Program-made: the position numbers and the translations under genes
Notes under the pieces: model-generated
Databases searched by the model: none
Told to the model about the DNA's origin: nothing
Seen by the model: the letters and a program-made list of their open reading frames with translations, nothing else
Part shown: piece by piece, positions 19,382 through 58,689 of the stretch
Layout: every line of letters begins with the position of its first letter
Numbering within the stretch: the first letter of the stretch is position 1
Virus record (IMG/VR): IMGVR_UViG_3300032046_000001
Span: 186,001 to 250,000 of that record
DNA length: 64,000 nt
Reading direction: 5' to 3' (one strand)

Positions 19382-19440
19382 AAAGAGAGAAGGAAGTTTG
19401 AGATCACTTCTTTTCAAGTCGTGATTCTCTATCTCTCTTT
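19382..19440 (-). promoter_or_regulatory. Candidate structured 5' leader upstream of the HNH gene
   Basis: Outer stem AAAGAGAG/CTCTCTTT; homologous to 58632-58689. Confidence 0.5.
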
Positions 19441-19476
19441 TATTATCATATAATGAAAAATAAATTTATAATAAAA

Positions 19477-19782
19477 TCATTCTTCGTCTTCAAATTTAAA
19501 ATCGTCCGTTTTCTTTTTAAAATCATCAAACCAATCATTTAATTCATAAATTGTAATTTCTGGAGAAAAACAAGGTTTTTGATTCCCATCTTCACCATAA
19601 TAGGCGAAATCATAAAACCTATAATATATACTACCACGAAATTCAAAATAATATGGTGGTTCTTTTAATTCACAAAATTGATTTATTAATGATTCCAATT
19701 CAGTTTTTACTTCTTCAACTGAATTGGCTATAATAGGATAAACACCACCAGGGGTATCAATTATAATTTTCATATCAATCAT
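19477..19782 (-). CDS. Hypothetical protein, 'TLxEWF' paralog family
   Basis: YPIIANSVEEVK...ITIYELNDWF. Confidence 0.6.
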   Translation of the reverse strand: MIDMKIIIDTPGGVYPIIANSVEEVKTELESLINQFCELKEPPYYFEFRGSIYYRFYDFAYYGEDGNQKPCFSPEITIYELNDWFDDFKKKTDDFKFEDEE

Positions 19783-20164
19783 CCCTCCAACTATCTTCTA
19801 CAATTCCACATTCTGATGAATCAAAACCAAGTTGTTCAAAAACTTTATCAAGTCTTTTTTCAAATTGTTTCTTAGTTTCATCATCATTCATATCACTGTA
19901 TTCTATGCCAATATAATTGGTATCATCCCAAGGATTAGAATGTACCTCAAGATCAACACTCATTGTTTTACAAGCTATATCGGCTACCATGTAAAGATCC
20001 ACACCTCTCTTAAATTTTTCATAAGTACAATCTGGAGCAAGTTTATCTTTCATAGCATCATAAGTTTTTTGAATAACCGACTCTGGAATTTTAGACATAG
20101 ATAACCCATACATACAAAAACTTACACTACTGCTGTTTGTCACATAATCAATTTTTACTTTCAT
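19775..20164 (-). CDS. VTNSSS-motif family protein #6
   Basis: MKVKIDYVTNSSSVSFCMYG; MNDDETKKQF...LGF. Confidence 0.8.
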   Translation of the reverse strand: MKVKIDYVTNSSSVSFCMYGLSMSKIPESVIQKTYDAMKDKLAPDCTYEKFKRGVDLYMVADIACKTMSVDLEVHSNPWDDTNYIGIEYSDMNDDETKKQFEKRLDKVFEQLGFDSSECGIVEDSWRDD

Positions 20165-20174
20165 TATTTTCCTT

Positions 20175-20577
20175 TTAGTAATTTACATTCTTCTTTGGGG
20201 TGACATCAGAATAATAACTTTCCTCAATATATTCAACATCACCATAAATTCCCAATAACATTAATAAATTTTCAATTCTTTTTATTAAATCATCTTCTGT
20301 TTCACCAGTTTCTTTATCGTATGATGATAAACCAATAACTACTTCATGTTCATTCTGAAGATATTTTAACTCCAATTTTCTACATTCACCTTTAAGATCA
20401 TTAAGCTGAGCTTGAAGATCTAATTTATACTCTTCAAATGTCCCAGTATACCTGGAAAATTTAAATAAGTTTTTGATAATACTCTCGTTTAATCCGTCAC
20501 GAATAAACACATAGGTGCCCCCAAACACAAAATGAAGTGCTACTACTATTCGTTACAAAACCCAATTTAATTTTCAT
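20175..20577 (-). pseudogene. VTNSSS-motif family protein #7, split by a +1 frameshift in a G5 run
   Basis: ATG 20577 gives MKIKLGFVTNSSSTSFCVWG; removing one G at 20518-20522 continues WGTY... as in paralog #10; span is 403 nt = 3n+1. Confidence 0.75.
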
Positions 20578-21014
20578 TCGTACCACTCCTTATCAATATA
20601 TTCGATTTTATTACAAAATTCTTTAAAATCAACAGCATTGGTTTCTTTAAACATTAATTCAAAGATCTCTTTGATTATATTTATATCACTGGAACAATCT
20701 TCATATATATATTCTCCGGTTCTACAATTATATTGTCCTCTGGCATACAAACCGATAAAAATTTCTTCAGTTTCACAACAATAACGAGCAATTAATTTGT
20801 GATCTTCAATAAAATCATAAAAAATCTCATTTATAGTACTAAGTACGAATTCTTCAAAACATTCAATCTTTCTCATATTATGATATCTATCTGATTTTTT
20901 AAAATAATCATATATTGGATGCCATAGACTTTCGGGAACATATTTAATCTTGATACCATAACCAGTGAATGATGTACTACTACTATTAGTTACGAAATCA
21001 AATTTTATTTTCAT
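20574..21014 (-). CDS. VTNSSS-motif family protein #8
   Basis: MKIKFDFVTNSSSTSFTGYG; ATGA overlap at 21011-21014; close duplicate of #9. Confidence 0.8.
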   Translation of the reverse strand: MKIKFDFVTNSSSTSFTGYGIKIKYVPESLWHPIYDYFKKSDRYHNMRKIECFEEFVLSTINEIFYDFIEDHKLIARYCCETEEIFIGLYARGQYNCRTGEYIYEDCSSDINIIKEIFELMFKETNAVDFKEFCNKIEYIDKEWYE

Positions 21015-21457
21015 TGATACCATTCCTTATCAATAAATTCAATTTTTTCGATCATTTCATTAAAATCAACAATTGCGGTTTCTGAAAATAGTACTTTAAA
21101 AATTTCTTTTACTTTTTCTGGATTTCTGGTTGATTCATCATAAATATATTTTTTTATTTTGACATCATAATGTCCTCGTTCTTTTATACCAATAAAAAAT
21201 ACACTTTCTTCTTGACAGTATTTAATATTTAAATTAAAATCTTCAATAAAATCTTGAAATACTCCACCAATACGACCGTTCAAAACAAATTCTTCAAAAT
21301 TCATATCTTCCATATCATAATTATTTTCTTCATTATGCGCCTTGGCATAGTTGTATAGAAGATGCCATAATCTCTCAGGAATATTTTTTAATTTGATACC
21401 ATATCCCGTGAATGATGTACTACTACTGTTTGTAACATAATCAAATTTAATTTTCAT
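21011..21457 (-). CDS. VTNSSS-motif family protein #9
   Basis: MKIKFDYVTNSSSTSFTGYG. Confidence 0.8.
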   Translation of the reverse strand: MKIKFDYVTNSSSTSFTGYGIKLKNIPERLWHLLYNYAKAHNEENNYDMEDMNFEEFVLNGRIGGVFQDFIEDFNLNIKYCQEESVFFIGIKERGHYDVKIKKYIYDESTRNPEKVKEIFKVLFSETAIVDFNEMIEKIEFIDKEWYQ

Positions 21458-21816
21458 ATAATTTCCCCATATGACTCGAATTTCCTTTCTCTCAACAGAT
21501 CAAAATCAACAAATTCAAGTTTAATAACATCTAAAAAACAATCCCATGCATCTAACTCTGATATAAAATCTTTTTGTACCATTGTATCGTCGTTTCCTGA
21601 AACAACAACAATAAATATTGAACTTCCATCCATGTCGTGACTTCTATTAAAACTGACTTCTACATAATCATGAATAATTTCTCTAACAACTTCATTATTA
21701 CAATATTCAGTAAATATTTTGACTTTAAAGTTTGGACACCATTCATCATGGGTTCTTTTAAGAACAGTAATATGTTGTGGAACTGATCGTTTATAACAAC
21801 CATTTTCATCTTTCAT
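21454..21816 (-). CDS. Hypothetical protein (paralog of 22228-22530)
   Basis: AGGAG SD before ATG 21816; C-terminal SG.DD...DF.SE.DA.DCF..(V/I)I.L.F shared with the paralog. Confidence 0.6.
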   Translation of the reverse strand: MKDENGCYKRSVPQHITVLKRTHDEWCPNFKVKIFTEYCNNEVVREIIHDYVEVSFNRSHDMDGSSIFIVVVSGNDDTMVQKDFISELDAWDCFLDVIKLEFVDFDLLRERKFESYGEII

Positions 21817-21820
21817 ACTT

Positions 21821-22024
21821 TTAATCAAACTCCTTATATAAATCTGATTTCCAATGATTTGGAATTGTTGATTGGGAAATATTAATAATCCCGCCACAAA
21901 CTTTACATATGATGTAGTCACCACTGAATTCTACAACATGGATATCATCTTTATATACACCAAGAACACTCTTACAGAATGGACAACTTTTTCTAATAAA
22001 ATCGTTATTTATTATAACATCCAT
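21821..22024 (-). CDS. Small zinc-ribbon protein
   Basis: CPFC...CKVC. Confidence 0.6.
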   Translation of the reverse strand: MDVIINNDFIRKSCPFCKSVLGVYKDDIHVVEFSGDYIICKVCGGIINISQSTIPNHWKSDLYKEFD

Positions 22025-22033
22025 ATCTATCTC

Positions 22034-22240
22034 CTATACAGATTTATATCGAGGATTCCTTTTTAAATTAATATGTCTTATACCAATTCGTTTCTTATGT
22101 TTTTCTATGTTAGCAGTATATGCAAGTACCATCTTTCTAAAATTTTCGGGATCTGTTAAGTCAACGAGTGGCATTTTCTCATATTTTTCTCTCAAATCAT
22201 CCATTATTTTTTTCTTTTCTTCTTCTGTCATTTTATACAC
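22034..22240 (-). CDS. Hypothetical protein
   Basis: ORF in a tightly packed operon. Confidence 0.55.
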   Translation of the reverse strand: MYKMTEEEKKKIMDDLREKYEKMPLVDLTDPENFRKMVLAYTANIEKHKKRIGIRHINLKRNPRYKSV

Positions 22241-22530
22241 ACCTTCAAAAAATTCATTTTTTCGAGATCTTTAAAATTTATAAATTTTAATTGAATTATA
22301 TTCATAAAACAATCTTTCGCGTCGGATTCTGTATCAAAATCATGCAACATTTTAATACCGTTACAACCGCCACCAGAAATAAATATTCTGAATTTTGGTT
22401 GATATGCAAACTCTCCCGTCAATAATTCTATAAGTTGTATCATAACTAATCCAAAATAACTTGATCGCCAATCATCACTCGTTGATTTAAATACTTCTAT
22501 ATATAATTTTTCACTCAATCTTCTGACCAT
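22228..22530 (-). CDS. Hypothetical protein (paralog of 21454-21816)
   Basis: HDFDTESDAKDCFMNIIQLKF. Confidence 0.6.
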   Translation of the reverse strand: MVRRLSEKLYIEVFKSTSDDWRSSYFGLVMIQLIELLTGEFAYQPKFRIFISGGGCNGIKMLHDFDTESDAKDCFMNIIQLKFINFKDLEKMNFLKVCIK

Positions 22531-22868
22531 CTATCTCTATGCTGAATTACAGCACTGTTTTCATCATCTTCTTCAAATAATTTTATTTCATCTCTAATAT
22601 ACCATTCATTAATAGTTATTATCTTATATTCAAACCATACTTTGCTTTGATACCAATCACAGTATATAAAATTAGATGCGAAAAATTCTATTCCATTAAT
22701 TTGAAATTCCCATTCATGAATAAAATTTGTACTGTCGCCTTTTTCCCAATAACCTTCGTCTATTATCTGTTGAAGTACAGGGTCTAATATATTTCTAATC
22801 TGTTGTTCAGATTTAGCAGTAATCCTATATATGTGGTCATTTGGACAAAGTATAATATATTTATTCAT
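22515..22868 (-). CDS. Hypothetical protein, 'TLxEWF' paralog family
   Basis: IYRITAKSEQQIR...YKIITINEWY. Confidence 0.65.
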   Translation of the reverse strand: MNKYIILCPNDHIYRITAKSEQQIRNILDPVLQQIIDEGYWEKGDSTNFIHEWEFQINGIEFFASNFIYCDWYQSKVWFEYKIITINEWYIRDEIKLFEEDDENSAVIQHRDRWSED

Positions 22869-23251
22869 CTATCCTCCCAAGAAGTTAATATAAATTCTGG
22901 TTCTTTGTTAATACCGATGATTTTTAATTTTTCTTTAATTTCATTTTTGAATTCATCCAGAGTTTGATCACCTCTCATTTTCTCAGGACTTCTTCCAAAT
23001 ATAATATACGATGTGCTAAACATATCACCTTTTTCTATAAAATCAAAATTATTATTACGACAAAATTCTCTAATATCATCATATTGACTATTTTTATTTT
23101 TAAAATATAATTCTATATTACCAATTCCACCCACATATTTATATAATTTTTCTGCGATATCTTTAGTGATATCGCAGAAATCAAGATATGTTCCCCATAC
23201 ACAAAAAGAGACTGAACTACTATTCGTAACAAACGATGTTTTTATTTTCAT
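22865..23251 (-). CDS. VTNSSS-motif family protein #10
   Basis: MKIKTSFVTNSSSVSFCVWGTY; GRSPEKMRGDQTLDEFK. Confidence 0.8.
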   Translation of the reverse strand: MKIKTSFVTNSSSVSFCVWGTYLDFCDITKDIAEKLYKYVGGIGNIELYFKNKNSQYDDIREFCRNNNFDFIEKGDMFSTSYIIFGRSPEKMRGDQTLDEFKNEIKEKLKIIGINKEPEFILTSWEDR

Positions 23252-23413
23252 TCTACACTATCCCACAACTTTTTAATCTGATCCTGTTCTTCTAAAGTAG
23301 ATTTCTTTTTAAATTGAAACCAACCAAATGTTTTTTCAAATAATTCCCATGTTGGTTCAAATCCAGCTTTTCTAATTTCATTTTTTAATTTTTTATTACC
23401 GTTTTGGTTTCAT
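23248..23413 (-). pseudogene. Small gene with an apparent +1 frameshift in its first five codons
   Basis: ATG directly follows the upstream TAA; the +1 frame is open to a TGA overlapping the next ATG; span 166 nt = 3n+1. Confidence 0.5.
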
Positions 23414-23752
23414 TTAATATCCAGGATCGAGATCAACATAATAATCAATCTCTGTATTATCAAATCCAATTTGTTTTAATTTATTTTTTATTTTTTCTTT
23501 AAATTCACGAAGAGTTTGATCTTCTTCCATATCACATGGATGTAAACCTATAAATATATTATCAATTTCATCTTTATGATATATCAACCCAAATGATTTA
23601 CATAATTCTTCAAGTTCATCATAAAATAATACTGAATATTTTTTATAGTCATCAATAGTTTTAAATATTTGATATTCACTATTAAATAATATTTCTAAAG
23701 TTTTACTTGGAAGATCTCTTTTGGATGTTTCAATTCCCCAAATTGTCAACAT
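23414..23752 (-). CDS. VTNSSS-family homolog lacking the N-terminal motif
   Basis: Starts MLTIWG; keeps IGLHP.DMEEDQTLREFK...L..IGF. Confidence 0.7.
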   Translation of the reverse strand: MLTIWGIETSKRDLPSKTLEILFNSEYQIFKTIDDYKKYSVLFYDELEELCKSFGLIYHKDEIDNIFIGLHPCDMEEDQTLREFKEKIKNKLKQIGFDNTEIDYYVDLDPGY

Positions 23753-24162
23753 TGAATTATTCCATTACAAAATTCGATTTGATCTGCCCAAAATACACAA
23801 TCCTTTTTTGGTATAAGTCCTGTTTTATTAATTTCATCAACAATTCGTATCTTAAAATCTTTTAAAGTTTCATTATCTTTCATCTTATCTGGACTCATAC
23901 CAACTATCTTTTCACCATCGTCTGTGTATATAATTTCGAGAACATCTTCCAATTTTTCCATTATATAATTAAAACAATCATAATCTTCCATGAAATATTC
24001 ACGAGTGATTGGTTTTGATCGTGTTGAATTGTAACCTCTATCATATTCTTCCCACGCCTTCTGTTTCATTTCTTCAGTAATATTATCTCTTGTTATAACA
24101 ACACCCCAAAGACAATAAGCGCAACTACTACTATTTGTTACGAAACCCAATTTTACTTTCAT
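23746..24162 (-). CDS. VTNSSS-motif family protein #11
   Basis: MKVKLGFVTNSSSCAYCLWG; VGMSPDKMKDNETLKDFK. Confidence 0.8.
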   Translation of the reverse strand: MKVKLGFVTNSSSCAYCLWGVVITRDNITEEMKQKAWEEYDRGYNSTRSKPITREYFMEDYDCFNYIMEKLEDVLEIIYTDDGEKIVGMSPDKMKDNETLKDFKIRIVDEINKTGLIPKKDCVFWADQIEFCNGIIQC

Positions 24163-24863: not shown

Positions 24864-24887
24864 TTTATTTACTCTCCAAAAAAAATT

Positions 24888-24916: not shown

Positions 24917-24921
24917 TTATA

Positions 24922-25302
24922 CTAACTAATCCAAACTTCATTGATAAGATATGGTTCTTGAGTAAATCCGAGTTCTTTTAACTCATTTTGGATTCTATTT
25001 TTTAATTCTCCAAGTGTCATATCATTTTTCAAATAGTCTGGACCTAATCCCAAACAATAGGTAAAACCTCTTTGTATACAACGTAAATTTAAATTTGAAA
25101 AACTTTCAAATTCACTTTGATAAAATTTATTATCTATATATTCACGATATCCGTTACAGATATTTGTAGAATTTATTCGGTTGTGTCTCTCATACATCTT
25201 AACAAGAACTTCATATGGTAATGATCGAACATCTACATAAATACCCCACATACAAACGCTATTTATAGTTATGGGTTGTTTAAAATGATACGTGTTATCC
25301 AC
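24922..25302 (-). CDS. VTNSSS-family homolog with a degenerate N-terminal motif
   Basis: ITINSVCMWG; LGLGPDYLKNDMTLGELK...LKELGF. Confidence 0.7.
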   Translation of the reverse strand: MDNTYHFKQPITINSVCMWGIYVDVRSLPYEVLVKMYERHNRINSTNICNGYREYIDNKFYQSEFESFSNLNLRCIQRGFTYCLGLGPDYLKNDMTLGELKNRIQNELKELGFTQEPYLINEVWIS

Positions 25303-26311
25303 AATTCTCCTCTATCGTTTCAGATATATCTTCCAATTGAAACGGACAACTTGTATTATGATTTCTCAAAAACTCACGACATCCAATAAATGATTCAGAT
25401 TCATTCCAAATCTTTTGAATTGGATTATCATCTGTTATTTGGACTCCGTGAGACGAATAGCAGGCGAATGAACAAGGAACAACCTTACCATCAGGAGTAA
25501 TATACATACTCGCTCTACTGGCCTCACAGGTATCTAAACAGACATCTTCTATACCTGTCAGTTCAGTTATCCTTTTAATCCGATTTACCAAACAAGAATC
25601 AACACCCATCTTGAATTGAGTTTTACCAGCTCTCAATTTATCGATAAATATTTTTATTTGATCATCACTTGGAATAAGATCATAACGATTCTTTGATCTT
25701 CCTTGCGGTTTGAATAACAAAAATACAACAGCATTCAATTTGGAAATATCAAACTGACCATTCCAAATATCTTCACCATCTAATAACCGACACGCTCTTT
25801 CAAATCTCTCAGTTGAAAGAATGAAATGAATATTGGTCTTGATACCAGAGTCAATAAATCTGTTAATCGCGCTATAGGTGAATGGGCGATCATAATCCGA
25901 TACAGCACATGCTCCACATATTTTGGAGAGTTCAATTTGTCCATCAGTCAGACTATTACCCGATGTTGTATAATTTGGAACAACACCATTTGTTCTGGCA
26001 TATGAAATAATTTCTCCAAAATTTGGATGAAGATTGGGATCACCACGTCCACCAAGAGCGATTTGAGTGACGTGATTTTTAGCCTGATCGATAATTTTCT
26101 TAAATGTCTCTAATTCCATATGAGGTTGTTCATCATCTCCCTGATAACAAACAGGACATCGATTTAAACAATGTCCCATAATACCGATATCGAGGAGACT
26201 TGGAAAATCCAAACTGAATGGATCAGGATTTCCATTAACACCTTGTAAAATTTCAAATCCCGTTTCACTATTAAACATGATAACATATGTACTACCCTTA
26301 ATAATTTTCAT
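25295..26311 (-). CDS. Radical SAM protein with SPASM/Twitch-like C-terminus
   Basis: CxxxCxxC (CLNRCPVC), QIALGGRGDPNLHP, NYTTSG, CEASRASMYITPDGKVVPCSF. Confidence 0.92.
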   Translation of the reverse strand: MKIIKGSTYVIMFNSETGFEILQGVNGNPDPFSLDFPSLLDIGIMGHCLNRCPVCYQGDDEQPHMELETFKKIIDQAKNHVTQIALGGRGDPNLHPNFGEIISYARTNGVVPNYTTSGNSLTDGQIELSKICGACAVSDYDRPFTYSAINRFIDSGIKTNIHFILSTERFERACRLLDGEDIWNGQFDISKLNAVVFLLFKPQGRSKNRYDLIPSDDQIKIFIDKLRAGKTQFKMGVDSCLVNRIKRITELTGIEDVCLDTCEASRASMYITPDGKVVPCSFACYSSHGVQITDDNPIQKIWNESESFIGCREFLRNHNTSCPFQLEDISETIEENCG

Positions 26312-27660: not shown

Positions 27661-28641
27661 TTAATCTTCCTCATGATCTTCTAATATCTCATCAATTTCT
27701 TTATCTGATAATTTTTTATAAAGCTGTAATCTTGATGTTCGGATTTCACCGTCAGTCTCATATGGAACGACAATTCCAGGAAACCATTCCCGTCGAATAT
27801 AACATTCCCATATATCTTTTACTCCCCGACCATGTTTTGGATCTGTATTAGTTTTTATATAATTCGCTAACCACTTTTCAGATCCTACATATATGCCACA
27901 TCCATGATAATCGGTTCTATCTGGATTAACAATATCTGTTATGATCGAATCTTCTTTTATTATCCACTTTGGATTTGGTTTATGATAATCACCAAAGATC
28001 TTATATACAATAAGTCCAGACGCATCTTCACAAAAATTAGCATCTATATATTCAATAGGATCTAAAAATCCCGACGATCCTGAAAAATTAGTTCCAATTA
28101 AACTCACACGACGTAATCCAGATCTTATAAATCTCAGATTAGTCATTATGGCATTTTTTAATGTAGAATTTTCAAAAACGTTAAAAAGTATTTCAGACTC
28201 ATCCCAATCAGAATCATCTAAATCAACTTTATCAAATGAAACTGTATTTGGTTTTGATTTTTTAAAAATACATCCTCCCATTTTATTATTTCCGAATTTA
28301 CAGAGTAATAATTTACACGAATCAAATCTTGAATATTCCATATTACAGAAATTGAAACGAGTGTATTTCAAATCTGACTGACTAAAATTAGTATCATTTA
28401 TGTCACATCCAATGAATTCAACTTTGTCTAATTCGGTATGGGTGAATAAACATTTGTTGAGATTGCAGTTCTCAAATATCAACCCGCTAAGTTTCTTTCC
28501 AGCAAAATTAAATTGATCAAGATGAATGTTTTGAAAGCCATAAATAGTGTGACCACTTGAATTCCAGGATTCTGGATTATTCAAATAGTACTCTATTAAT
28601 CCGTGGGTTAACTTATTTCTTGAATACATAACATCGCTCAT
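27661..28641 (-). CDS. Pentapeptide-repeat protein with a C-terminal phage domain
   Basis: 5-residue periodic F/L repeats (FENCNLNKCLFTHTEL, FENSTLKNAIM); C-terminal YKIFG...GCGIYV...KIR-like segment. Confidence 0.8.
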   Translation of the reverse strand: MSDVMYSRNKLTHGLIEYYLNNPESWNSSGHTIYGFQNIHLDQFNFAGKKLSGLIFENCNLNKCLFTHTELDKVEFIGCDINDTNFSQSDLKYTRFNFCNMEYSRFDSCKLLLCKFGNNKMGGCIFKKSKPNTVSFDKVDLDDSDWDESEILFNVFENSTLKNAIMTNLRFIRSGLRRVSLIGTNFSGSSGFLDPIEYIDANFCEDASGLIVYKIFGDYHKPNPKWIIKEDSIITDIVNPDRTDYHGCGIYVGSEKWLANYIKTNTDPKHGRGVKDIWECYIRREWFPGIVVPYETDGEIRTSRLQLYKKLSDKEIDEILEDHEED

Positions 28642-36431: not shown

Positions 36432-37346
36432 TTGAAGTGTAAAATATGTGAAAAAGAACTTAAAGATTCATTAAAATCTTTGGCACAACATATATTAAAT
36501 AATCATAAAGAAATTGGAATAAAAAATTATTATGATGAATATTTTAAAAAAGAAAAAGAGAATGTTTGTTTAGAATGTGGAAAAGAAACTAAATTTGAAG
36601 GTTTGAAAAAAGGTTATAGACAGTTTTGTTCAACCAAATGTTCAAATTCAAATAAAAATAAATTAGAAAAAACAAGAGAAATAAATTTAAATAAGTATGG
36701 TGGTACGGGATTTCAAGTCAAAGAACTTTCTGATAAATCGAGAAAAACAACCAAAGATAAATATGGAGTAGAATTTGGAAGTCAGTCTAAAGAAGTTCAA
36801 AAGAAACAAATAGAAACCTTTAGAAAAACTTTAGGTGTCGATTGGCCATCCCAAAATAGAGTGGTAAGAGAAAAACAAGTTAAAACATTACAACATAAAT
36901 ATAATACTGATAATCCAATGAAGGTTGAAAAAATTAAAAATAAACAACATGAAAGTATGTTGAAGAAGTATGGCGTAGAAACTTATTCTCAGACACAAGA
37001 GTGGAGAAATAAGATGTTAAATGGTTTTGCTTCTCATGTATATTCTTTTGTTAAAAATCCCTCAAAACCACAGGTTAAAACTTTTGAACTTGTAAAAAGT
37101 ATATTCGGAGAGGCTGTTTTAAATTTTCCTATATATGAAATAAATAGAATTATTGACGTTGCAATACCATCCTTAAAGATTGCGATTGAATATGATGGTT
37201 CTTACTGGCATAAAGATGAAAATTTAGATATAATTCGTCAAAGAGAAGTGGAAAATTTAGGATGGAAATTTATACGGTACAGAGATCGTATTCCGAGTTT
37301 AGAAGAACTTAAATACGACATTGATAAAATAACAAACATTAGCTAA
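36432..37346 (+). CDS. Putative homing endonuclease (zinc finger, KYG repeats, PD-(D/E)XK/Vsr-like domain)
   Basis: CKIC..H..H, repeated KYGVE..SQ, IDVAIPSLKIAIEYDGSYWH; TTG start with GGAGG SD. Confidence 0.7.
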   Translation: MKCKICEKELKDSLKSLAQHILNNHKEIGIKNYYDEYFKKEKENVCLECGKETKFEGLKKGYRQFCSTKCSNSNKNKLEKTREINLNKYGGTGFQVKELSDKSRKTTKDKYGVEFGSQSKEVQKKQIETFRKTLGVDWPSQNRVVREKQVKTLQHKYNTDNPMKVEKIKNKQHESMLKKYGVETYSQTQEWRNKMLNGFASHVYSFVKNPSKPQVKTFELVKSIFGEAVLNFPIYEINRIIDVAIPSLKIAIEYDGSYWHKDENLDIIRQREVENLGWKFIRYRDRIPSLEELKYDIDKITNIS

Positions 37347-43040: not shown

Positions 43041-43865
43041 ATGAATAATTTTTATATTTATGTTTATTTAGATTCCAGAAAGCCTGGAAAACATTGTTAT
43101 GATAATATCTGTTTTTTATATGAACCAATTTATATTGGAAAAGGAAAAAATGATAGATGGAAAGTTATTAATGGAAGAACTCCAATTTTTATTAATAAAT
43201 TTAATAAAATTAAAAAATATGGGTTAAAACCAATTGTTATAAAGTTATATGAAAATTTAAATGAAAATTTATCTCTTGAACTAGAAAAAAAATTAATTAT
43301 TGAAATTGATAAAATAAATCCTGGAATTCTTATTAATATGACCAGTGGTGGTGAAGGAACGAGCGGGTATATACACACAGATGAAACAAAAAAAAGATTA
43401 TCAGAGATAAGGAAAAATAAACAAATATCATTAGGTCAAAATAATCCAATGTTTGATATTCATCGTTTTGGGAATAATGCACCACATTTTGGAAAAAAAC
43501 ATTCAGAAGAATCAAAAATTAAAATAAGTGAAAATAGAAAAGGAAAAAATACTGGAAAAGATAATCATAATTTTGGAAAACATCTTCCTAAAGAAACAAG
43601 AAATAAAATTAGTGAAAAACATAAAGGAAAATATATTTCACAAGAAACAAAAGTAAAACTATGTGAAAAACGTAAAAATAAAAAAGGAAATAATAGTCCA
43701 AACCATAAACTAACAGAACAACAAGTTATCCAAATAAAAATATTATTAAAAGAAGGAAATTTAACTCAACAAGAAATTGCCGATATGTTTGGAGTTAGTT
43801 CTATAACAATTTCAAAAATAAAAACAGGAAAAATTTGGTCGCATATTAAATTGGGAGAAAATTAA
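43041..43865 (+). CDS. GIY-YIG-like homing endonuclease with NUMOD3 repeats and HTH
   Basis: YIYVYLDSRK...YIGKGK; FGKKHSEESK repeats; LTQQEIADMFGV. Confidence 0.8.
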   Translation: MNNFYIYVYLDSRKPGKHCYDNICFLYEPIYIGKGKNDRWKVINGRTPIFINKFNKIKKYGLKPIVIKLYENLNENLSLELEKKLIIEIDKINPGILINMTSGGEGTSGYIHTDETKKRLSEIRKNKQISLGQNNPMFDIHRFGNNAPHFGKKHSEESKIKISENRKGKNTGKDNHNFGKHLPKETRNKISEKHKGKYISQETKVKLCEKRKNKKGNNSPNHKLTEQQVIQIKILLKEGNLTQQEIADMFGVSSITISKIKTGKIWSHIKLGEN

Positions 43866-46396: not shown

Positions 46397-47383
46397 TTGA
46401 ATTTGAATAATTATTATATTTATATTTATTTAGATCCTCGTAAATCAGGAAAATATTTATATGGAGAGTATGAATTTGAATACAAACCATTTTATATTGG
46501 TAAAGGTAAAAATAGAAGATATTTGGATAAATGTGGAAGAAATCCAATTTTTAAAAATAAAATAAATAAAATCAAAAAATCTGAATTAGAACCGATAATT
46601 ATAAAATTATATGAAAATTTGAATGAAAAAGAATCATTTGAAAAAGAAATTGAATTAATAGAAAAATTTGGAAGAATCGAATTAGGAACTGGTCCATTGG
46701 TTAATATGACGATTGGTGGTGACGGTAAAAGTGGAAATATTGTTTCTGAAGAAACAAAAAAGAAAATAAGAAAAGATTTTTCTGATATTAAAAAAGAATT
46801 CGAAAGAAGAAATTATATTTTATTATCAGAAGAAAAAGACTATAAAAATGCATTTACAAAATTAAAATATATTTGTAATGAAGGACATGAATGTTTTATT
46901 AGTTGGAGTAATTTTCAACGAGGATGTGGTTGTTCTGTTTGTGATAATGAAAAACAAAAAAAAATTTTTTATGATATAAAACAGGAATTTGAAAGAAGAA
47001 AATATAAATTATTAACGGAAGAAAAAGATTATAAAGATAACGATACAAAATTAAAATATATTTGTCCGAAAGGACACGAAGGTTATATTAGTTGGAATAG
47101 TTTTCAACAAGGACGAGGTTGTCCAATTGAAGGTAAAAAATCTGGTTCTAAAAAACTAAGAAAAAATTTTCAAGAAATTAAAAAAGAATTTGAAAGAAGA
47201 AATTATATTTTATTAACAGAAGAAAAAGATTATGAAAATATTTATACAAAATTAAATTATATTTGTCCAAAAGGACATGAAGGTTCTATTTGTTGGAATA
47301 ATTTTCAACAAGGAAGATGTTGCCCTATTTGTGGAAAAAAACATTTAAAACATATTAATATTAAATTAGGAGAAACAACATGA
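46397..47383 (+). CDS. GIY-YIG-like homing endonuclease with three ICxKGH repeats
   Basis: YIYIYLDPRK...YIGKGK; KLKYICPKGHEG.I.W..FQQG repeats. Confidence 0.8.
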   Translation: MNLNNYYIYIYLDPRKSGKYLYGEYEFEYKPFYIGKGKNRRYLDKCGRNPIFKNKINKIKKSELEPIIIKLYENLNEKESFEKEIELIEKFGRIELGTGPLVNMTIGGDGKSGNIVSEETKKKIRKDFSDIKKEFERRNYILLSEEKDYKNAFTKLKYICNEGHECFISWSNFQRGCGCSVCDNEKQKKIFYDIKQEFERRKYKLLTEEKDYKDNDTKLKYICPKGHEGYISWNSFQQGRGCPIEGKKSGSKKLRKNFQEIKKEFERRNYILLTEEKDYENIYTKLNYICPKGHEGSICWNNFQQGRCCPICGKKHLKHINIKLGETT

Positions 47384-53032: not shown

Positions 53033-53044
53033 TATTCAAACTCC

Positions 53045-53968
53045 TTATGAAAGTAATTTAAAAACTTTATAAACATCAGCCATATCAGTTCCTGGAATTT
53101 CAGAATAAACTGAAATTACTTCTGATGGAAAAAGTAATTCCTGAACCGCTACATTTTTTACATCTATACCTCCAAAAACATTTTTATATGATCTATCAAT
53201 TGATGATAAAATATGACTAAAAGTACTAATATTTTTTATAAATATACTAACACTCTTAGTAAATAATTTAATTAAGACAATATATTGATTCGCTAATGTG
53301 TCGAATGCTTTGGAATCTAAAGTAGAATATGATTTTAATGACATTAATTTTTTATGATACTTGGTTAATATCTTGTTATCAATATTTTTTTCTTTTTCTA
53401 CTTTTTCAAATAAAAATTTTATTATTGATTCTATTTCAAGATCAAATACACCTTTTAATTTAAACGTATCTTGAAAATAAAAATAATAAAAATCAAATAA
53501 TTTTTTTCTGAATATACTTATAAATTTATCTGGATGATTTGCCGCAAACATATGCATAGTTTCATGAACTAATATTTCACTTAATAGATTGTTATCAACA
53601 AATCCATATTTATTTATTGAATTACTAATCAGTATATAAATTTTATTACTGTCAATTTCATAGAAACCAAATACTTGTCGAAATTCTTCTCTAAAATATT
53701 GTTCTTCTGAACGAATTCTGTCCGTTGGATGTAATCTATATAATATTGTTGATACGATTCCTTTTGTTAAAAAACACGGTACAACAATATTATTATTAAC
53801 AAGTTTTGTTAAACTTTCAATTATTGGTTTCATCTTATTAGTTTTATACATCGATTTAAGAAATGAGTTTCTGATATGATTTGATGTATATAACTTTAAA
53901 TTTCCAAATATTGGTATAGAGTGTAATCCAACGGGAGGAGCAAATAACTCACTGATATTATTATTCAA
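53045..53968 (-). CDS. Putative zincin-like metallopeptidase
   Basis: ILVHETMHMF (HExxH). Confidence 0.5.
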   Translation of the reverse strand: MNNNISELFAPPVGLHSIPIFGNLKLYTSNHIRNSFLKSMYKTNKMKPIIESLTKLVNNNIVVPCFLTKGIVSTILYRLHPTDRIRSEEQYFREEFRQVFGFYEIDSNKIYILISNSINKYGFVDNNLLSEILVHETMHMFAANHPDKFISIFRKKLFDFYYFYFQDTFKLKGVFDLEIESIIKFLFEKVEKEKNIDNKILTKYHKKLMSLKSYSTLDSKAFDTLANQYIVLIKLFTKSVSIFIKNISTFSHILSSIDRSYKNVFGGIDVKNVAVQELLFPSEVISVYSEIPGTDMADVYKVFKLLS

Positions 53969-53979
53969 TATATCACCTC

Positions 53980-55653
53980 CTAATCTTTGTTAATTATATC
54001 AAATACATCTATCACAGAATAATTACCGTATTTAGTGACTTTTGAATTTGTTATTTGATCTTTTATCTTTTTAATAATAGAAAAATTATCAACTTCTCTT
54101 ATACCACTATTATCGAATGGATTATTATCATCATTATTTAATCTAAGAATATTATCAAAATCCATCAATTCTTCATATCTAGTGTCAGCTTCAATGATCA
54201 ATGGAGGATCATATTTACGAACAAAATAACAAAATGCCGCAGCCATAACTAAATCATCATGGCATCCCTCGTCTGCTTCAACTTTCCCACTTGGTTTTGT
54301 TATTAAACCTATTAATTCTAGAGCTAAATTTTTTGATTTTATAGTTGTTGGAAATTGACTAACATATGAATATAATGCATCAATAACCAATGGTCTGTTC
54401 TGTCTATCTAAAAAAATACCTGGAATAATATTTGTTATTTCTCCTGCTTTATTTCTTTTTTTCTCTTTATATAACATGGTGTGATATGTACTTCTATTAA
54501 GAGTCTCCATTACTTGATTTCCAACACCATTATTCTCTATCACTAACGTTCCTGGATATGTTGCACAAGCAAGTTCTACTATTTTACACAAATCGATAAC
54601 TTCACATTTAGAGTGATATTCCCAAACTTGTGTCATTGAAATATAATCAAAAATTACTATAGTCGATTTATCTTCACCATTCAAAGTTGCAGTATCAACA
54701 CCAATTATATAATGCCTATTGGGTACTGGTTTTTCATAAATTCTTATTTCACCATTGAATATTTTATGAATTTCAATTGGATCAACAGGATTATCCTGTA
54801 GAACAATATTTGTTTTTTCATCAAAGAATGAACCCGATGTCGGTAAAAATTTTAACTCTAATTCTTGCTGGATTTTTCTAAGATCATTATCAAAGAGTCT
54901 GCATTGCGTTTGATACCATTCTTCATTTAGTTCCTTAATCATCTTCCAATGGATTATGAAAGGTTTGAAGATATCATTACCTGCAACGGCATTTTGATAT
55001 CTGCTATAAAAAAACTTTCCAGTACCAACTGTTTTATTTGGTGTACTCAAAATTATTGTTCCATATGGTACATCATTTTCTTTGGCAGATTTTTGATTAG
55101 TTGCTAAAGCTGGCACCATTCCTGTCCAAGCATCATCTAATTTTTGAACAAATGCCGCTTCATCAATAACTAAAAAAGTAATACTTTCACCACGAAAACA
55201 ATTCATAGGATTTTTGGGGTCAATTGGAGAGTTATATACTTTGCTACCATTTTTTAATATAAAAGATCGTTCATTTCTCTTTTCAAATTTTGGTCGCATC
55301 CATGAAGGTAATTTATCAATAAATCCAGCTATAAATCTTGAAAATTTTGTTGCTGCTGGTCCATCTTTGGAAATTATTCCAACAACAGCATTATCATGAA
55401 AAACTACTAACCATGAAATATATGCTTGAATTATTGTACTAATACCAATTTGTCGAGATTTTACAACTATAACATAATGTTCTTCATTTATAGTTTTAAT
55501 TAATTCTAATTGTTTATCATATGGTTTTATTTTTACATCACCACCAGGAAGTTCCAAAAGAATGTCGTTGGAAATATAATGATTAAAATTATTTTTACAT
55601 TTCAAATATTCACTGACATTATCCTCCATTATTTTTATTTTTTCATTTTTCAT
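53980..55653 (-). CDS. terL: Terminase large subunit (T4 gp17-like)
   Basis: KSRQIGIST, FLVIDEAAF (Walker B), ILSTPN, IIGVDTA, HDDLVMA. Confidence 0.92.
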   Translation of the reverse strand: MKNEKIKIMEDNVSEYLKCKNNFNHYISNDILLELPGGDVKIKPYDKQLELIKTINEEHYVIVVKSRQIGISTIIQAYISWLVVFHDNAVVGIISKDGPAATKFSRFIAGFIDKLPSWMRPKFEKRNERSFILKNGSKVYNSPIDPKNPMNCFRGESITFLVIDEAAFVQKLDDAWTGMVPALATNQKSAKENDVPYGTIILSTPNKTVGTGKFFYSRYQNAVAGNDIFKPFIIHWKMIKELNEEWYQTQCRLFDNDLRKIQQELELKFLPTSGSFFDEKTNIVLQDNPVDPIEIHKIFNGEIRIYEKPVPNRHYIIGVDTATLNGEDKSTIVIFDYISMTQVWEYHSKCEVIDLCKIVELACATYPGTLVIENNGVGNQVMETLNRSTYHTMLYKEKKRNKAGEITNIIPGIFLDRQNRPLVIDALYSYVSQFPTTIKSKNLALELIGLITKPSGKVEADEGCHDDLVMAAAFCYFVRKYDPPLIIEADTRYEELMDFDNILRLNNDDNNPFDNSGIREVDNFSIIKKIKDQITNSKVTKYGNYSVIDVFDIINKD

Positions 55654-56446
55654 TTTTTGTTTCCCTACAATTTAATTTTTTTAATTTTATATTTGATATT
55701 GTTGATATACAAACATTATGTTTTTTAGCCATCTGCCTATAATTTAATTCTTTTTTTTCTATCTCAATTTGAATATCTATAATTTTTTGATCCGTTAATT
55801 TAAAATTTGGATTGTCTTTACAGAAAAGACCTTTACCAAAATTAGGATTATTTTCACCAATATATTTTCCTTTTTTGGACTCACTCATTTTATTTTTTGA
55901 TTTTTCTGAAAAAAATTTTCCCTTTTTAGATTCACTCATCTTCTTTTTTGATTCTTCTGAATGATGTTTACCAAAATTTGATGATTTTTCTCCTTTTTGT
56001 TTTTCACTTATTATTTTTTTTATTTCTTTACTATGTTGTTTTTTAAAAAATGGATTATTTTCACCTTTTACTTTTTCACTTATTTTTTTTCTTGTTTGGT
56101 ATGAAGTAATTTTACCACTGCTTCCTTCACCGCCATTGGTCATATTTAAAAGTGAACCAGTTCCTAAATCAATTCTTCCTATTTCTTGGATCAATTTTAT
56201 TTCAAGTTCAAAAGATTCTTCTTCATTTAAATTTTCATATAATTTAAAAACTACTGATTGTAATTTAGATTGTTTGATTTTATTTATTTTATTTTTAAAA
56301 AATAAATTTCTTCCATGTTCAATTGAATATCTTCTATCTTTACCTTTTCCAATATAAAATGGTTCGAATAAGAAACAAATATCTTCATAACAATACTTTC
56401 CAGATTTTCTTGGATCAAGATAAATATAAATATAAAAATTATTCAT
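55643..56446 (-). CDS. GIY-YIG-like homing endonuclease with NUMOD3 repeats
   Basis: YIYIYLDPRK...YIGKGK; GKHHSEESKKKMSESKKG. Confidence 0.8.
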   Translation of the reverse strand: MNNFYIYIYLDPRKSGKYCYEDICFLFEPFYIGKGKDRRYSIEHGRNLFFKNKINKIKQSKLQSVVFKLYENLNEEESFELEIKLIQEIGRIDLGTGSLLNMTNGGEGSSGKITSYQTRKKISEKVKGENNPFFKKQHSKEIKKIISEKQKGEKSSNFGKHHSEESKKKMSESKKGKFFSEKSKNKMSESKKGKYIGENNPNFGKGLFCKDNPNFKLTDQKIIDIQIEIEKKELNYRQMAKKHNVCISTISNIKLKKLNCRETKNEK

Positions 56447-56473
56447 CTTTTAAAATTTCCTTTATCAAATTAT

Positions 56474-57718
56474 TCATACAGTATATCTATTCGATCTAAT
56501 CAGATAAAGAACGGCTACTAAGTTCCAATCTCTTGTTCTATGAAAATTTAATAATACTGATTTCATAATATATTTTCCAACAAGATTAATATATTCTGAT
56601 GTTTCAGTATTAAATTTCACACACTCACCAACAGAATCAATCAATGTTAAAAAATTAATATCTCGTTCCAAACGAAAATTAATATTTGCCATATTTGCTA
56701 TGATTTTAGACATAGTTGAGATTACAAATGTATTATCTTTATTATATCCAGTATGTTGAACATAATATCTTGTTCGATCATCAATATTTGGATCTAATTT
56801 AATCTGTTTATTTTTATCAATTAACCCATACTTGGTTGCTATATTTTCTAAATCTTCTTCTATTTTATAATATAAAGTGTCAACTGGTTTTGATATATAT
56901 TTAATATTTTTTGAAAATATAGAAAATTTTGTATTGTCAGAATTATCGATGTTGATTGCATCATAAGTATAGAATGTTTTTCCGTCACTTGTTTTCTTTA
57001 TTTTTTCTAAATTATTAGAATCACTAGCTAATTGATAAAAAGTACATTTTGGAGTTTCATTCATTTTCTGCGTCAAATTATTAACATGTACTTCATTATT
57101 ATAACGACAATGACTATGTGTGATTCCTTTAAAAATACCGAATGTTTCATCAAGAGAATTAATAGCATTAGTCAATGTAGTTGGTGGAATAATTACTTGA
57201 TCAATCACAGTATTATTTAGATTTGCTGAATCTAAAACTAATTTAGAATTTGTTTTTGTTGATTTTACAAGATCTTGTAAAATATTACTGATTGTTTTTC
57301 CAATGAAAATTTTATTAACAAGCGAAGACATTGTTTTAAAAGGTTTTCTTGTTACACATGTTAATGGGAATGATACGCGCTCAGTTTGTTTATCTGTATA
57401 TATCTGGGGGCTGATTGGTATAGAATATTCAGATTTTAAAAACATCAATTCTAAATCTATTCGTTGTCCGGCCATCCCTTCTCCTTCACCAACATTAATA
57501 ATTGAAAGTTTTATTGGATCTTCGCCATTTATGTTTGTGATAATATCTCTTGCATCAACAAATATTGTCATTTTTACTATAGTGTATATAGAATTGATTG
57601 TTTCAATGACTTGACAATCAACAAGATCGTTAGAATAATCAGTATTCTTAATATGTAGTTGGATATCATATTTTCTACTTGGGACAAATTGTCTTTTATC
57701 TATTTGATTTGGCAACAC
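56474..57718 (-). CDS. Putative baseplate hub protein (gp27-like)
   Basis: Size and context; weak motif similarity. Confidence 0.4.
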   Translation of the reverse strand: MLPNQIDKRQFVPSRKYDIQLHIKNTDYSNDLVDCQVIETINSIYTIVKMTIFVDARDIITNINGEDPIKLSIINVGEGEGMAGQRIDLELMFLKSEYSIPISPQIYTDKQTERVSFPLTCVTRKPFKTMSSLVNKIFIGKTISNILQDLVKSTKTNSKLVLDSANLNNTVIDQVIIPPTTLTNAINSLDETFGIFKGITHSHCRYNNEVHVNNLTQKMNETPKCTFYQLASDSNNLEKIKKTSDGKTFYTYDAINIDNSDNTKFSIFSKNIKYISKPVDTLYYKIEEDLENIATKYGLIDKNKQIKLDPNIDDRTRYYVQHTGYNKDNTFVISTMSKIIANMANINFRLERDINFLTLIDSVGECVKFNTETSEYINLVGKYIMKSVLLNFHRTRDWNLVAVLYLIRSNRYTV

Positions 57719-57725
57719 CGTTCTC

Positions 57726-58595
57726 CTATATTTTGATATGATTCCACGTTATACCAGTTTTTATATTTGAGATTGTTTTTCGATTAACTCCAAATATATC
57801 AGCAATTTCTCTTTGTAATAATTTTCCTTCTTTTAATAATAATTTTATCTGAATAACATCTTGTGATATTAATATTGAATTATAATTTTTTTCACCTTTT
57901 TGATTTAATTCTCCATTTTTATATTTTTCTTTTATTGTTTCACTAATTTTTTTTCTTGCATCTTCATCTACACAAATAGAACAACTACATCCTTGTTGAA
58001 AATGATTCCAGTTAATAGAACCTTTATGTCCTTTTGGACATGTATATTCTAATATTGTTTCATTATTTTTATAATCTTTTTCTTCTGATAGTAAAATATA
58101 TTTTCTTTTTTCAAATTCATTTTTTATATAAGAGAAATTTTTTCTATTTTTCTCACCTATTTTATTTTTAGTTTCTTTTAATAAATGTTTTCCAAAATTC
58201 GGATGATTTTCACCTCTATTTATTTCGCTTAATTTTTGTTTTGTTTCTTCTGTATGTTTATAACCACTTATTCCTTCACCACCATCTGTAATATTAACTA
58301 GAATTCCTGGATTTTTTATATTAATTTCATTTATCAATTCAACTTCTTTTTCAAATGATTTTTCTTCATTTAAATTCTCATATAATTTAAAAAAAATTAG
58401 TTCCAATCCAGATGATTTTATTTTATTAATTTTTCTTATAAAATAATCACTTCTTCTGTTTTCACCAATTTCTTTCCATCTTTCATTACTTCCCTTACCG
58501 ACATACATTGGTTTATATAAAAAACTAAAATTTTCATAACAATACTGTCCCGATGTTCTCGGATCTAAGTAAATATAAATATAAAATTCATTCAT
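57726..58595 (-). CDS. GIY-YIG-like homing endonuclease (NUMOD3 + TCPKGH + HTH)
   Basis: YIYIYLDPR...YVGKG; HTEETKQKLSE; YTCPKGH; QREIADIFGV. Confidence 0.8.
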   Translation of the reverse strand: MNEFYIYIYLDPRTSGQYCYENFSFLYKPMYVGKGSNERWKEIGENRRSDYFIRKINKIKSSGLELIFFKLYENLNEEKSFEKEVELINEINIKNPGILVNITDGGEGISGYKHTEETKQKLSEINRGENHPNFGKHLLKETKNKIGEKNRKNFSYIKNEFEKRKYILLSEEKDYKNNETILEYTCPKGHKGSINWNHFQQGCSCSICVDEDARKKISETIKEKYKNGELNQKGEKNYNSILISQDVIQIKLLLKEGKLLQREIADIFGVNRKTISNIKTGITWNHIKI

Positions 58596-58631
58596 TTCAA
58601 ACTCCTTGTTTGTTTATTCCCTTGAATTTTT

Positions 58632-58689
58632 AAAGAGAGCAGGATAATCAAGGTTTTATCTTTTCGATTCGCGTAATCTATCTCTCTTA
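58632..58689 (-). promoter_or_regulatory. Candidate structured 5' leader upstream of the endonuclease gene
   Basis: Outer stem AAGAGAG/CTCTCTT; homologous to 19382-19440. Confidence 0.5.

What the first reader, a model, noticed from the sequence alone, without database searches (positions are those of the whole stretch)
19382..58689. Homologous ~60-nt structured leader upstream of two unrelated homing endonuclease genes
Seen (- strand): 19440-19382 AAAGAGAG-ATAG-AGAATCACGACTT-GAAAAG-AAGTGATCTCAAACTT-CCTT-CTCTCTTT precedes an HNH gene. 58689-58632 (T)AAGAGAG-ATAG-ATTACGCGAATC-GAAAAG-ATAAAACCTTGATTAT-CCTG-CTCTCTTT precedes a GIY-YIG gene. The outer stem, ATAG, the CG-containing loop and GAAAAG are conserved, while the distal hairpin differs in sequence but still pairs (AAGT/ACTT vs ATAA/TTAT). 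The hairpin before the Hef-like gene (4338-4372) also contains GAGATAG. Established: T4 homing endonuclease genes are regulated by 5' hairpins. Inference: a mobile cis-regulatory RNA or DNA motif shared across endonuclease families.
Basis: partly seen in the sequence, partly recalled or inferred. Interest (0 to 1): 0.6.

Follow-up and report, generated by a model that had tools for sequence, protein, structure and literature searches.

The report
Known RNA leader before phage endonucleases
The two look-alike stretches are real copies of a folded RNA leader already catalogued as the orphan motif 'int-alpA'. In this giant phage and in other phages it sits directly in front of selfish DNA-cutting enzyme genes, and it looks built to control their translation.

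Summary
Both sites exist as described and are homologous. They are 2 of 14 copies in a 312-kb AR9/phiKZ-like jumbo phage. All 14 lie 75-105 nt upstream of, and co-oriented with, homing-endonuclease-type ORFs: NUMOD4-HNH, GIY-YIG, and one zinc-finger relic.

The fold is a three-way junction, P1/AUA/P2/GAAAA/P3/CUK/P1', well supported by covariation (95.5% paired, 12 of 16 pairs with double changes). It is not new: it belongs to Rfam RF02996 'int-alpA', typed as an sRNA of unknown function. Two genome copies and several other phage copies pass Rfam's threshold. The two window copies do not.

What is new:
- Phage copies precede endonuclease genes of at least four families.
- The P3 loop is complementary both to a nearby upstream 'decoy' and to the true Shine-Dalgarno (SD) region, which a small hairpin displays. 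All three covary, also in bacterial int-alpA copies (permutation 0/2000).
- The P2 apex is almost always self-complementary.

Best reading: a portable cis-acting translational control leader, not an sRNA.

The parts
19382..19440 (-). Leader copy A, three-way-junction core. P1 19433-19440 pairs with 19382-19389. J1/2 AUA 19430-19432. P2 19416-19429. J2/3 GAAAA 19411-19415. P3 19393-19410 with loop L3 19398-19405. J3/1 CUU 19390-19392.
   Evidence: Read. R1 hit at G000:205381-205440(-), 73.4 bits. Pair counts.
19366..19371 (-). Copy A segment X (UUGAGA), a decoy complementary to L3
19348..19365 (-). Copy A hairpin P4. It displays the Shine-Dalgarno region (19352-19358), which is also complementary to L3.
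18888..19346 (-). HNH/NUMOD4/NUMOD3 homing-endonuclease ORF, 152 aa from ATG 19346. It is the shortest of the family in this genome.
58694..58702 (-). GGGAACAAA promoter-like motif. It fits the AR9 late promoter AACA-6N-T(A/G), which predicts a transcript start at 58688, the first base of P1.
   Evidence: The start site is inferred.
58633..58688 (-). Leader copy B core. P1 58682-58688 pairs with 58633-58639. AUA 58679-58681. P2 58666-58678. GAAAA 58661-58665. P3 58643-58660 with loop L3 58648-58655. CUG 58640-58642.
   Evidence: Read. R1 hit at G000:244631-244689(-), 71.8 bits. Pair counts.
58620..58625 (-). Copy B segment X (UCAAGG), a decoy complementary to L3
58598..58612 (-). Copy B hairpin P4 (CAAAC/GUUUG). 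The Shine-Dalgarno region 58602-58608 lies in and beside the loop and is complementary to L3.
57726..58595 (-). GIY-YIG/NUMOD3 homing-endonuclease ORF, 289 aa
58745..58774 (-). 11-bp hairpin followed by a T-rich run, after the upstream ORF (58880-59770). It looks like a terminator, which would make promoter + leader + GIY-YIG a separate unit.
   Evidence: Read directly. No tool was run on it.

Best explanation
The two sites are copies of a roughly 95-nt 5' leader RNA that belongs to the Rfam family int-alpA (RF02996). The conserved core is a three-way junction: P1, J1/2 (A/C)UA, P2, J2/3 GAAAA, P3, J3/1 CU(G/U), P1'. The loop of P3 (L3) acts as an anti-Shine-Dalgarno sequence. About 8-12 nt after P1' lies a decoy, X, with 6-8 nt complementary to L3. 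Another 13-17 nt downstream, a small hairpin (P4) displays the real Shine-Dalgarno region, whose 5 nt including the bases 5' of GGA are also complementary to L3. The start codon follows 5-9 nt later. I propose that L3 pairs either with X (a pseudoknot that leaves the ribosome binding site free) or with the P4 loop (a kissing contact that blocks the ribosome binding site). The leader would then set or switch translation of the nuclease gene behind it. It travels with such genes as a self-contained module. Shown here: homology, fold, covariation of L3, X and SD, position and orientation, and family membership. Inferred: that the pairings occur in vivo, that they control translation, and what shifts the balance.
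For: Family: cmscan places two genome copies at 36.6 bits (cut-off 35.8), matching the full model. Leaders before GIY-YIG, NUMOD4-HNH, phrog_374 HNH and DUF559-type genes in other viral contigs score 41-53 bits. Thirteen bacterial loci score 49-72 bits. Fold: one search gives 95.5% paired, 12 of 16 pairs with double changes, 0/500 shuffles and slid controls near 50%. Position: 14 of 14 genome copies lie 75-105 nt upstream of, and co-oriented with, endonuclease-type ORFs, out of about 36 such ORFs in roughly 690 ORFs. Six of 80 HEG-homologue loci from IMG/VR carry it 40-100 nt before the start codon. L3/X/SD: at least 9 different L3 sequences in the phage clade each have a matching X and matching bases 5' of GGA. 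Over 46 distinct L3 sequences (phage plus bacterial), the summed complementarity is 486 against 375 +/- 10 in permutations, 0/2000. Duplex energies of L3:X and L3:SD are similar, about -5 to -9 kcal/mol. Bacterial int-alpA copies show the same X, SD-in-hairpin and start codon. In an Aeromonas island the order is integrase, leader, 271-aa ORF, AlpA, all on one strand. Modularity: a GIY-YIG leader and an HNH leader are near-identical up to the ATG. RNA rather than DNA: G-U pairs occur on the sense strand, and the reverse strand scores 16 bits against 73.
Against: L3:SD is only about 5 bp, and X pairs slightly better, so the default state may simply be 'on'; no trigger is known. Part of the similarity between SD and X could be a by-product of duplication. 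P4 is weak in the AT-rich copies (0 to -4.7 kcal/mol), and single-sequence folds are not significant (z -0.7 to -2.3). About 22 endonuclease genes in the same genome lack the leader. The conserved junction bases are not explained by the switch alone.
Confidence: 0.6

Rival explanations
1. The same leader, but ligand-, protein- or dimer-controlled. The invariant junction (UA, GAAAA, CU) would bind a small molecule or a universal factor, or the self-complementary P2 apex would pair two leaders. That event would decide whether L3 takes X or the SD.
For: The junction bases are the same from 29% GC phage copies to 65-70% GC Burkholderiales copies. The P2 apex is a 4-6 nt palindrome in 13 of 15 distinct phage P2 sequences, with at least 9 different palindromes. 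A palindrome-to-palindrome swap occurs in otherwise identical leaders. P2 alone is predicted unstable as a hairpin (about 0 kcal/mol) but -7 to -12 kcal/mol as a self-duplex.
Against: No ligand or partner is indicated by gene context, since the downstream genes are nucleases or unknown cargo. One P2 class (GACG loop) is not palindromic. The cofold energies ignore concentration.
Confidence: 0.15
2. A constitutive 5' structure. A compact junction plus L3:X pseudoknot at the extreme 5' end would stabilise or insulate the mRNA and present the SD, without any switching.
For: The predicted late-promoter start falls on the first base(s) of P1 in 4 copies. X pairs with L3 at least as well as the SD does. 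The element accompanies cargo of unrelated sequence.
Against: It does not explain why the bases 5' of GGA in the real SD covary with L3, nor why the SD is held in a hairpin loop.
Confidence: 0.13
3. A trans-acting small RNA, as Rfam types the family. P1 plus the U-rich tail would act as its terminator, and the neighbouring genes would be incidental.
For: Rfam labels it 'Gene; sRNA'. A U-rich run follows P1' in many copies.
Against: X, P4/SD and a start codon follow at fixed distance and in fixed orientation in the 14 genome copies, 6 related phage copies, about 13 copies on other viral contigs, and 43 of 48 bacterial copies. L3 covaries with the SD of its own downstream gene. Fourteen different 'sRNAs' in one phage, each matching only its neighbour, is not parsimonious.
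Confidence: 0.07
4. A DNA-level element, for example a cassette boundary, a recombination site or an endonuclease target.
For: It marks the 5' edge of exchangeable endonuclease cassettes. P2 is a DNA palindrome.
Against: G-T pairs are tolerated on one strand only, and the reverse-strand score is negligible. It covaries with a ribosome binding site. The palindromes differ between copies, so no single DNA-binding protein fits.
Confidence: 0.05

Closest known systems
Rfam RF02996 int-alpA RNA (Weinberg et al. 2017, PMC5737381; orphan motif typed as sRNA)
   Same: Same three-way junction, same junction bases (UAG, CGAAAAG, CCUG), and the same 3' tail complementary to the P3 loop. Two genome copies and several phage copies exceed the curated score.
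   Different: The context here is a virulent-type jumbo phage and endonuclease genes, not the integrase/alpA islands of Proteobacteria. The sequence is AT-rich, so 12 of 14 copies, including both window copies, fall below Rfam's cut-off. I read it as a cis leader rather than an sRNA. The only mentions found in the searchable literature are list entries.
RBS-sequestering hairpins of T4 homing endonuclease genes (I-TevI, I-TevII, I-TevIII, segB, Aeh1 mobE; review PMC2988022)
   Same: Both are 5' RNA structures in front of phage homing endonuclease genes that are thought to limit translation.
   Different: In T4 a simple stable hairpin contains the RBS, and a late promoter inside it yields transcripts that cannot fold. 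Here the conserved fold lies upstream of the RBS. The RBS sits in a separate small loop and is matched by a distant loop and a decoy. The predicted promoter lies before the whole fold. There is no sequence homology.
Translational riboswitches and toxin-mRNA leaders with anti-SD / anti-anti-SD logic (own knowledge: type I toxin mRNAs such as hok, tisB, aapA1)
   Same: Alternative pairings of an anti-SD element decide ribosome access. They are used for genes that are harmful if over-expressed.
   Different: No ligand, antisense RNA or processing step is evident. The anti-SD is a hairpin loop presented by a conserved junction.
Kissing-loop dimerisation hairpins (own knowledge: HIV-1 DIS; guanidine-II riboswitch)
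   Same: The P2 apex is a 4-6 nt self-complementary loop flanked by an unpaired base.
   Different: Dimerisation is only inferred from sequence. One P2 class lacks the palindrome.

Membership tests
Rfam RF02996 int-alpA | Covariance-model score at or above the gathering cut-off (35.8 bits) | tested here: inconclusive
   Met by 2 of 14 genome copies (36.6 bits each; a third scores 33.4) and by related phage leaders at 41-53 bits. The two window copies did not reach the cut-off and did not appear at E<=10. They are linked to the family through model R1 and the intermediate copies.
Rfam RF02996 int-alpA | Three-way junction P1/P2/P3 with conserved UAG, CGAAAAG and CCUG at the junction | tested here: met
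   Alignments. Pair counts. Copy A has CCUU and copy B has CCUG.
Rfam RF02996 int-alpA | 3' tail (consensus AAGGG) complementary to the P3 loop (CCUU) | tested here: met
   Segment X is present in all copies and covaries with L3.
Rfam RF02996 int-alpA | Location between integrase and alpA in prophage-like islands of Proteobacteria | tested here: not met
   Here the leader precedes HNH or GIY-YIG genes of a jumbo phage. The canonical context was confirmed in Aeromonas locus L236. This is a naming context, not a structural criterion.
Rfam RF02996 int-alpA | Acts in trans as a small RNA (Rfam type) | not testable with these tools
   The sequence evidence argues for cis action.
T4-type RBS-sequestering hairpin of homing endonuclease genes | RBS lies inside a stable hairpin, and a late promoter within the hairpin gives unfolded transcripts | tested here: not met
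   The SD lies in the loop of the weak P4 hairpin, outside the conserved fold. The promoter-like motif lies upstream of P1. T4 description.
Hammerhead ribozyme (three-way junction with GAAA) | Core CUGANGA ... GAAA ... cleavage-site H | tested here: not met
   J1/2 is AUA, not CUGANGA. No ribozyme family matched at E<=10.
tRNA-like element | Match to the tRNA model | tested here: not met
   The Rfam tRNA model hits only the true tRNA cluster at 60518-63282. It does not match the leaders at E<=10.
Riboswitch | Ligand-dependent fold, and gene context pointing to a metabolite | not testable with these tools
   The downstream genes are nucleases or unknown cargo.

The most novel reading that the evidence does not exclude
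int-alpA is not an sRNA. It would be a widespread, host-independent and portable translational switch that selfish nuclease genes in phages and variable cargo genes in integrative islands carry with them. A junction-presented anti-SD loop chooses between a decoy and the real ribosome binding site. The choice is set by homodimerisation through the self-complementary P2 apex, so that the leader senses the concentration of its own mRNA, or alternatively by a still unknown universal ligand.
Probability: 0.2. Interest if true: 0.75.

Novelty: new member of a known kind. Interest (0 to 1): 0.5.

Why it matters
It assigns a testable function and mechanism to an orphan Rfam motif. The motif would be a cis-acting translational control leader built from an anti-SD loop, an SD decoy and a displayed SD. 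The same RNA module accompanies at least four unrelated endonuclease families in phages and variable cargo genes in bacterial islands. That suggests a general way for mobile, potentially harmful genes to bring their own host-independent expression control. It also shows that Rfam's threshold misses the AT-rich phage branch, and that the 'sRNA' label probably misleads annotation.

Tried and rejected
- Megablast of both loci against isolated phages found nothing.
- tblastn of the sheath protein and of an HNH protein found only distant relatives, below 37% identity.
- A single-protein locus search found nothing.
- A loose 15-base pattern scan of viral contigs returned almost only chance hits, 1 weak hit in 80 loci and that one inside coding sequence.
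- Model R1 is too AT-biased to recover the bacterial copies, so those were handled by pattern plus Rfam.
No read evidence was obtained and read laying was not used.
- Pfam, PADLOC and Atlas gave no function for the bacterial downstream ORFs.
- The supplement of the paper describing the motif is not held.
- Rejected readings: hammerhead ribozyme, tRNA mimic, group I intron fragment (no Rfam support), T4-type hairpin, DNA operator.
- The 4338-4372 hairpin was rejected as a third copy.
Full report
OBSERVATION

The downstream ORFs are an HNH/NUMOD4/NUMOD3 protein (ATG 19346, 152 aa) and a GIY-YIG/NUMOD3 protein (ATG 58595, 289 aa).

The window is G000:186001-250000 of a 312,420-bp virus record with direct terminal repeats and 28.6% GC. 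The record encodes two sets of RNA polymerase beta and beta' homologues. Its tail sheath is distantly related to those of Bacillus phage BpSp, Yersinia phage phiR1-37 and Staphylococcus phage S6. It is therefore an AR9/phiKZ-like jumbo phage.

HOW MANY COPIES, AND BEFORE WHAT

A regex scan followed by a covariance model (R1, built from 13 copies) finds 14 copies in the genome, at 54-79 bits. The next best hit is a reverse-strand artefact at 16 bits.

An in-genome jackhmmer census gives about 36 endonuclease-type ORFs, roughly 24 NUMOD4-HNH and 12 GIY-YIG. All 14 leaders lie 75-105 nt upstream of such an ORF and in the same orientation:
- 10 precede HNH genes.
- 2 precede GIY-YIG genes.
- 1 precedes a truncated GIY-YIG pseudogene.
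- 1 precedes a 50-aa C2H2 zinc-finger ORF. This ORF matches the N-terminus of the zinc-finger/MTES_1575 nuclease at window 4400-6430 and abuts a 552-aa ORF.

Most endonuclease genes without a leader abut or overlap the preceding ORF.

FOLD

The core is a three-way junction. In order: P1 (7-8 bp), J1/2 AUA, P2 (3-4 bp plus apex), J2/3 GAAAA, P3 (4-5 bp with a 6-9 nt loop, L3), J3/1 CU(G/U), P1'.

I aligned 19 copies to the model: the 14 genome copies plus 5 from other viral contigs. The results are:
- 95.5% of cells pair, against 79.7% in shuffles and 46-62% in slid controls.
- 12 of 16 pairs carry changes on both sides.
- No shuffle out of 500 reaches the observed values.

This alignment was fitted to the model, which favours the structure somewhat. 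Single-sequence folding is not significant in this AT-rich RNA.

IT IS A KNOWN FAMILY

Rfam in E-value mode matches two genome copies to RF02996 int-alpA over the whole model, at 36.6 bits against a cut-off of 35.8. A third copy scores 33.4. The Rfam consensus has the same junction bases and a 3' tail complementary to the P3 loop.

The two window copies do not reach the threshold. A stricter pattern scan of IMG/VR recovered leaders in other phage contigs that score 41-53 bits for int-alpA, so the family is continuous.

Thirteen bacterial loci, fetched with a consensus-derived pattern, score 49-72 bits. In Aeromonas locus L236 the order is tmRNA, integrase, int-alpA, an unknown 271-aa ORF, then AlpA, all on one strand.

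Rfam types the motif 'Gene; sRNA'. The searchable literature holds only list mentions. The supplement of the paper that described the motif is not held.

WHAT LIES DOWNSTREAM OF THE CORE

In every phage copy three things follow:
- A segment X, 8-12 nt after P1', is complementary to L3 over 5-8 nt, mostly 6-8.
- A small hairpin P4, 13-17 nt further on, presents the Shine-Dalgarno region. Its GGA plus the 2-3 bases 5' of it are again complementary to L3.
- The start codon comes 5-9 nt after P4.

At least nine different L3 sequences each have a matching X and a matching SD flank. Bacterial int-alpA copies have the same layout, with GC-rich P4 stems. Of 48 bacterial copies with the upstream UAG signature, 43 have an ORF of at least 50 aa starting in the 15-120 nt window scanned after CCUG, mostly 20-45 nt after it.

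Over 46 distinct L3 sequences the summed complementarity to the two sites is 486. It is 375 +/- 10 when L3 is permuted among sequences, and 0 of 2000 permutations reach the observed value. The duplex energies of L3:X and L3:SD are comparable.

Because the bases 5' of GGA are not needed for ribosome binding, their covariation with L3 is the main argument that L3 contacts the real ribosome binding site.

ASSOCIATION WITH NUCLEASES BEYOND THIS PHAGE

Among 80 IMG/VR loci that encode relatives of the HNH protein, the six closest carry the leader 40-100 nt before the start codon.

The pattern scan gave about 14 further leader matches on other contigs, 13 of them with a downstream ORF. Those ORFs are:
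- phrog_374 HNH endonucleases (6)
- NUMOD4-HNH (2)
- GIY-YIG (3)
- a DUF559/MTES_1575-type nuclease (1)
- one unknown ORF

The bacterial downstream ORFs are hypervariable and unannotated.

MODULARITY

The leader of GIY-YIG gene g74641 and that of HNH gene g1207 are near-identical from P1 to the ATG, where similarity ends. The one block that differs is the P2 apex, where one 6-nt palindrome is replaced by another.

P2 APEX

In 13 of 15 distinct phage P2 sequences the apex is a self-complementary 4-6-mer, and at least nine different palindromes occur. Many bacterial and other viral copies show the same feature. A second class has a GACG loop instead.

P2 alone is predicted unstable as a hairpin but stable as a self-duplex, with a mean difference of -9 kcal/mol against -3 for P3. 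This suggests loop-loop or duplex homodimers, but it is inference only. Window copy A lacks the palindrome and precedes the shortest HNH ORF, so it may be decaying.

PROMOTER

GGGAACAAA, usually followed by ATAT, occurs 18 times in the genome where about 1-2 occurrences would be expected. Nearly all copies are intergenic and point at genes.

The motif fits the AR9 late-promoter consensus AACA-6N-T(A/G), in which the last base is the transcript start (PMC5312081). For four leaders, including window copy B, this puts the start on the first base(s) of P1. The whole fold would then be at the 5' end of the mRNA. This differs from the T4 arrangement (PMC2988022). It is inferred, not mapped.

MECHANISM

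The most likely mechanism is a cis-acting translational control leader. L3 alternates between X, which leaves the ribosome binding site free, and the P4 loop, which blocks it.

It is open whether this sets a fixed low level of translation or is switched by a ligand, a protein, the ribosome or dimerisation. The invariant junction bases and the P2 palindromes hint at an additional input.

The rival readings are less consistent with the fixed geometry, the strand specificity and the covariation with the SD. They are:
- a constitutive stabiliser or insulator
- a trans-acting sRNA that uses P1 plus a U-run as terminator
- a DNA-level element

THE THIRD SITE

The hairpin at 4338-4372 lies on the plus strand after the sheath gene, is followed by a U-run, and is not matched by R1. 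It is nested in a long stem that pairs with the AAGGAG in front of the zinc-finger nuclease gene at 4400 (-30 kcal/mol, z = -7.3). That is a different, T4-like way of hiding a ribosome binding site.

VERDICT

It is a new, AT-rich, endonuclease-associated branch of Rfam int-alpA, and the data argue for revising the family's functional label.

Noticed in passing
window 4320-4400 (+): A long stem pairs the region just after the sheath gene with the AAGGAG in front of the zinc-finger/MTES_1575 nuclease gene (4400-6430). It encloses a terminator-like hairpin (4338-4372). Predicted -30 kcal/mol, z = -7.3. This is a separate, T4-like RBS-sequestering structure, not a copy of the leader.
   Followed up: partly
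window 35830, 36374, 38130 (+) and 58702 (-); 18 sites genome-wide: GGGAACAAA(ATAT) is a strongly over-represented intergenic motif that points at genes. It fits the AR9 late-promoter consensus AACA-6N-T(A/G). The phage has two sets of RNA polymerase beta and beta' homologues.
   Followed up: partly
P2 of all leader copies, e.g. window 58666-58678; G000:69418-69430: The P2 apex is a self-complementary 4-6-mer in most copies, with many different palindromes. One palindrome is swapped for another between otherwise identical leaders. This suggests RNA homodimerisation.
   Followed up: partly
G000:C1:40119-40178 (-) and downstream (locus L338): An intact leader, with one extra A in GAAAA, precedes a GIY-YIG gene truncated after 17 codons. 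The leader has outlived its gene.
   Followed up: partly
G000:C1:151328-153240 (locus L339 227-2038): One leader precedes a 50-aa C2H2 zinc-finger ORF, a relic of the nuclease family found at window 4400. Its stop abuts the ATG of a 552-aa ORF with weak glycosyltransferase similarity. The leader may have been co-opted for a gene that is not a nuclease.
   Followed up: partly
G000:C1:74600-74626 (+): Just upstream of the promoter and leader of GIY-YIG gene g74641 lies a fragment resembling the X-plus-P4 part of another leader. It looks like a scar of a nested cassette insertion.
   Followed up: no
window, whole: Endonuclease genes are very dense: about 36 in the 312-kb genome and about 10 in this window (1446-2252, 4400-6430, 15866-16318, 18888-19346, 36432-37346, 43041-43865, 46397-47383, 55643-56446, 57726-58595, 59914-60495). 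Only two of those in the window have the leader.
   Followed up: partly
window 53980-56446 (-): The large terminase gene (53980-55653) is overlapped at its start by a leaderless GIY-YIG gene (55643-56446).
   Followed up: no
window 60518-63282 (-): A cluster of seven tRNA genes. An HNH gene (59914-60495) starts 22 nt after one of them.
   Followed up: no
window 25295-26311 and 27661-28641 (-): A radical SAM/SPASM protein and a pentapeptide-repeat protein are encoded among small unknown ORFs.
   Followed up: no
loci L222, L223, L235, L236, L270: Bacterial int-alpA copies lie 1.5-5 kb from a tRNA or tmRNA gene, as expected for integrative islands. L236 also carries C4 antisense RNA and isrK.
   Followed up: no
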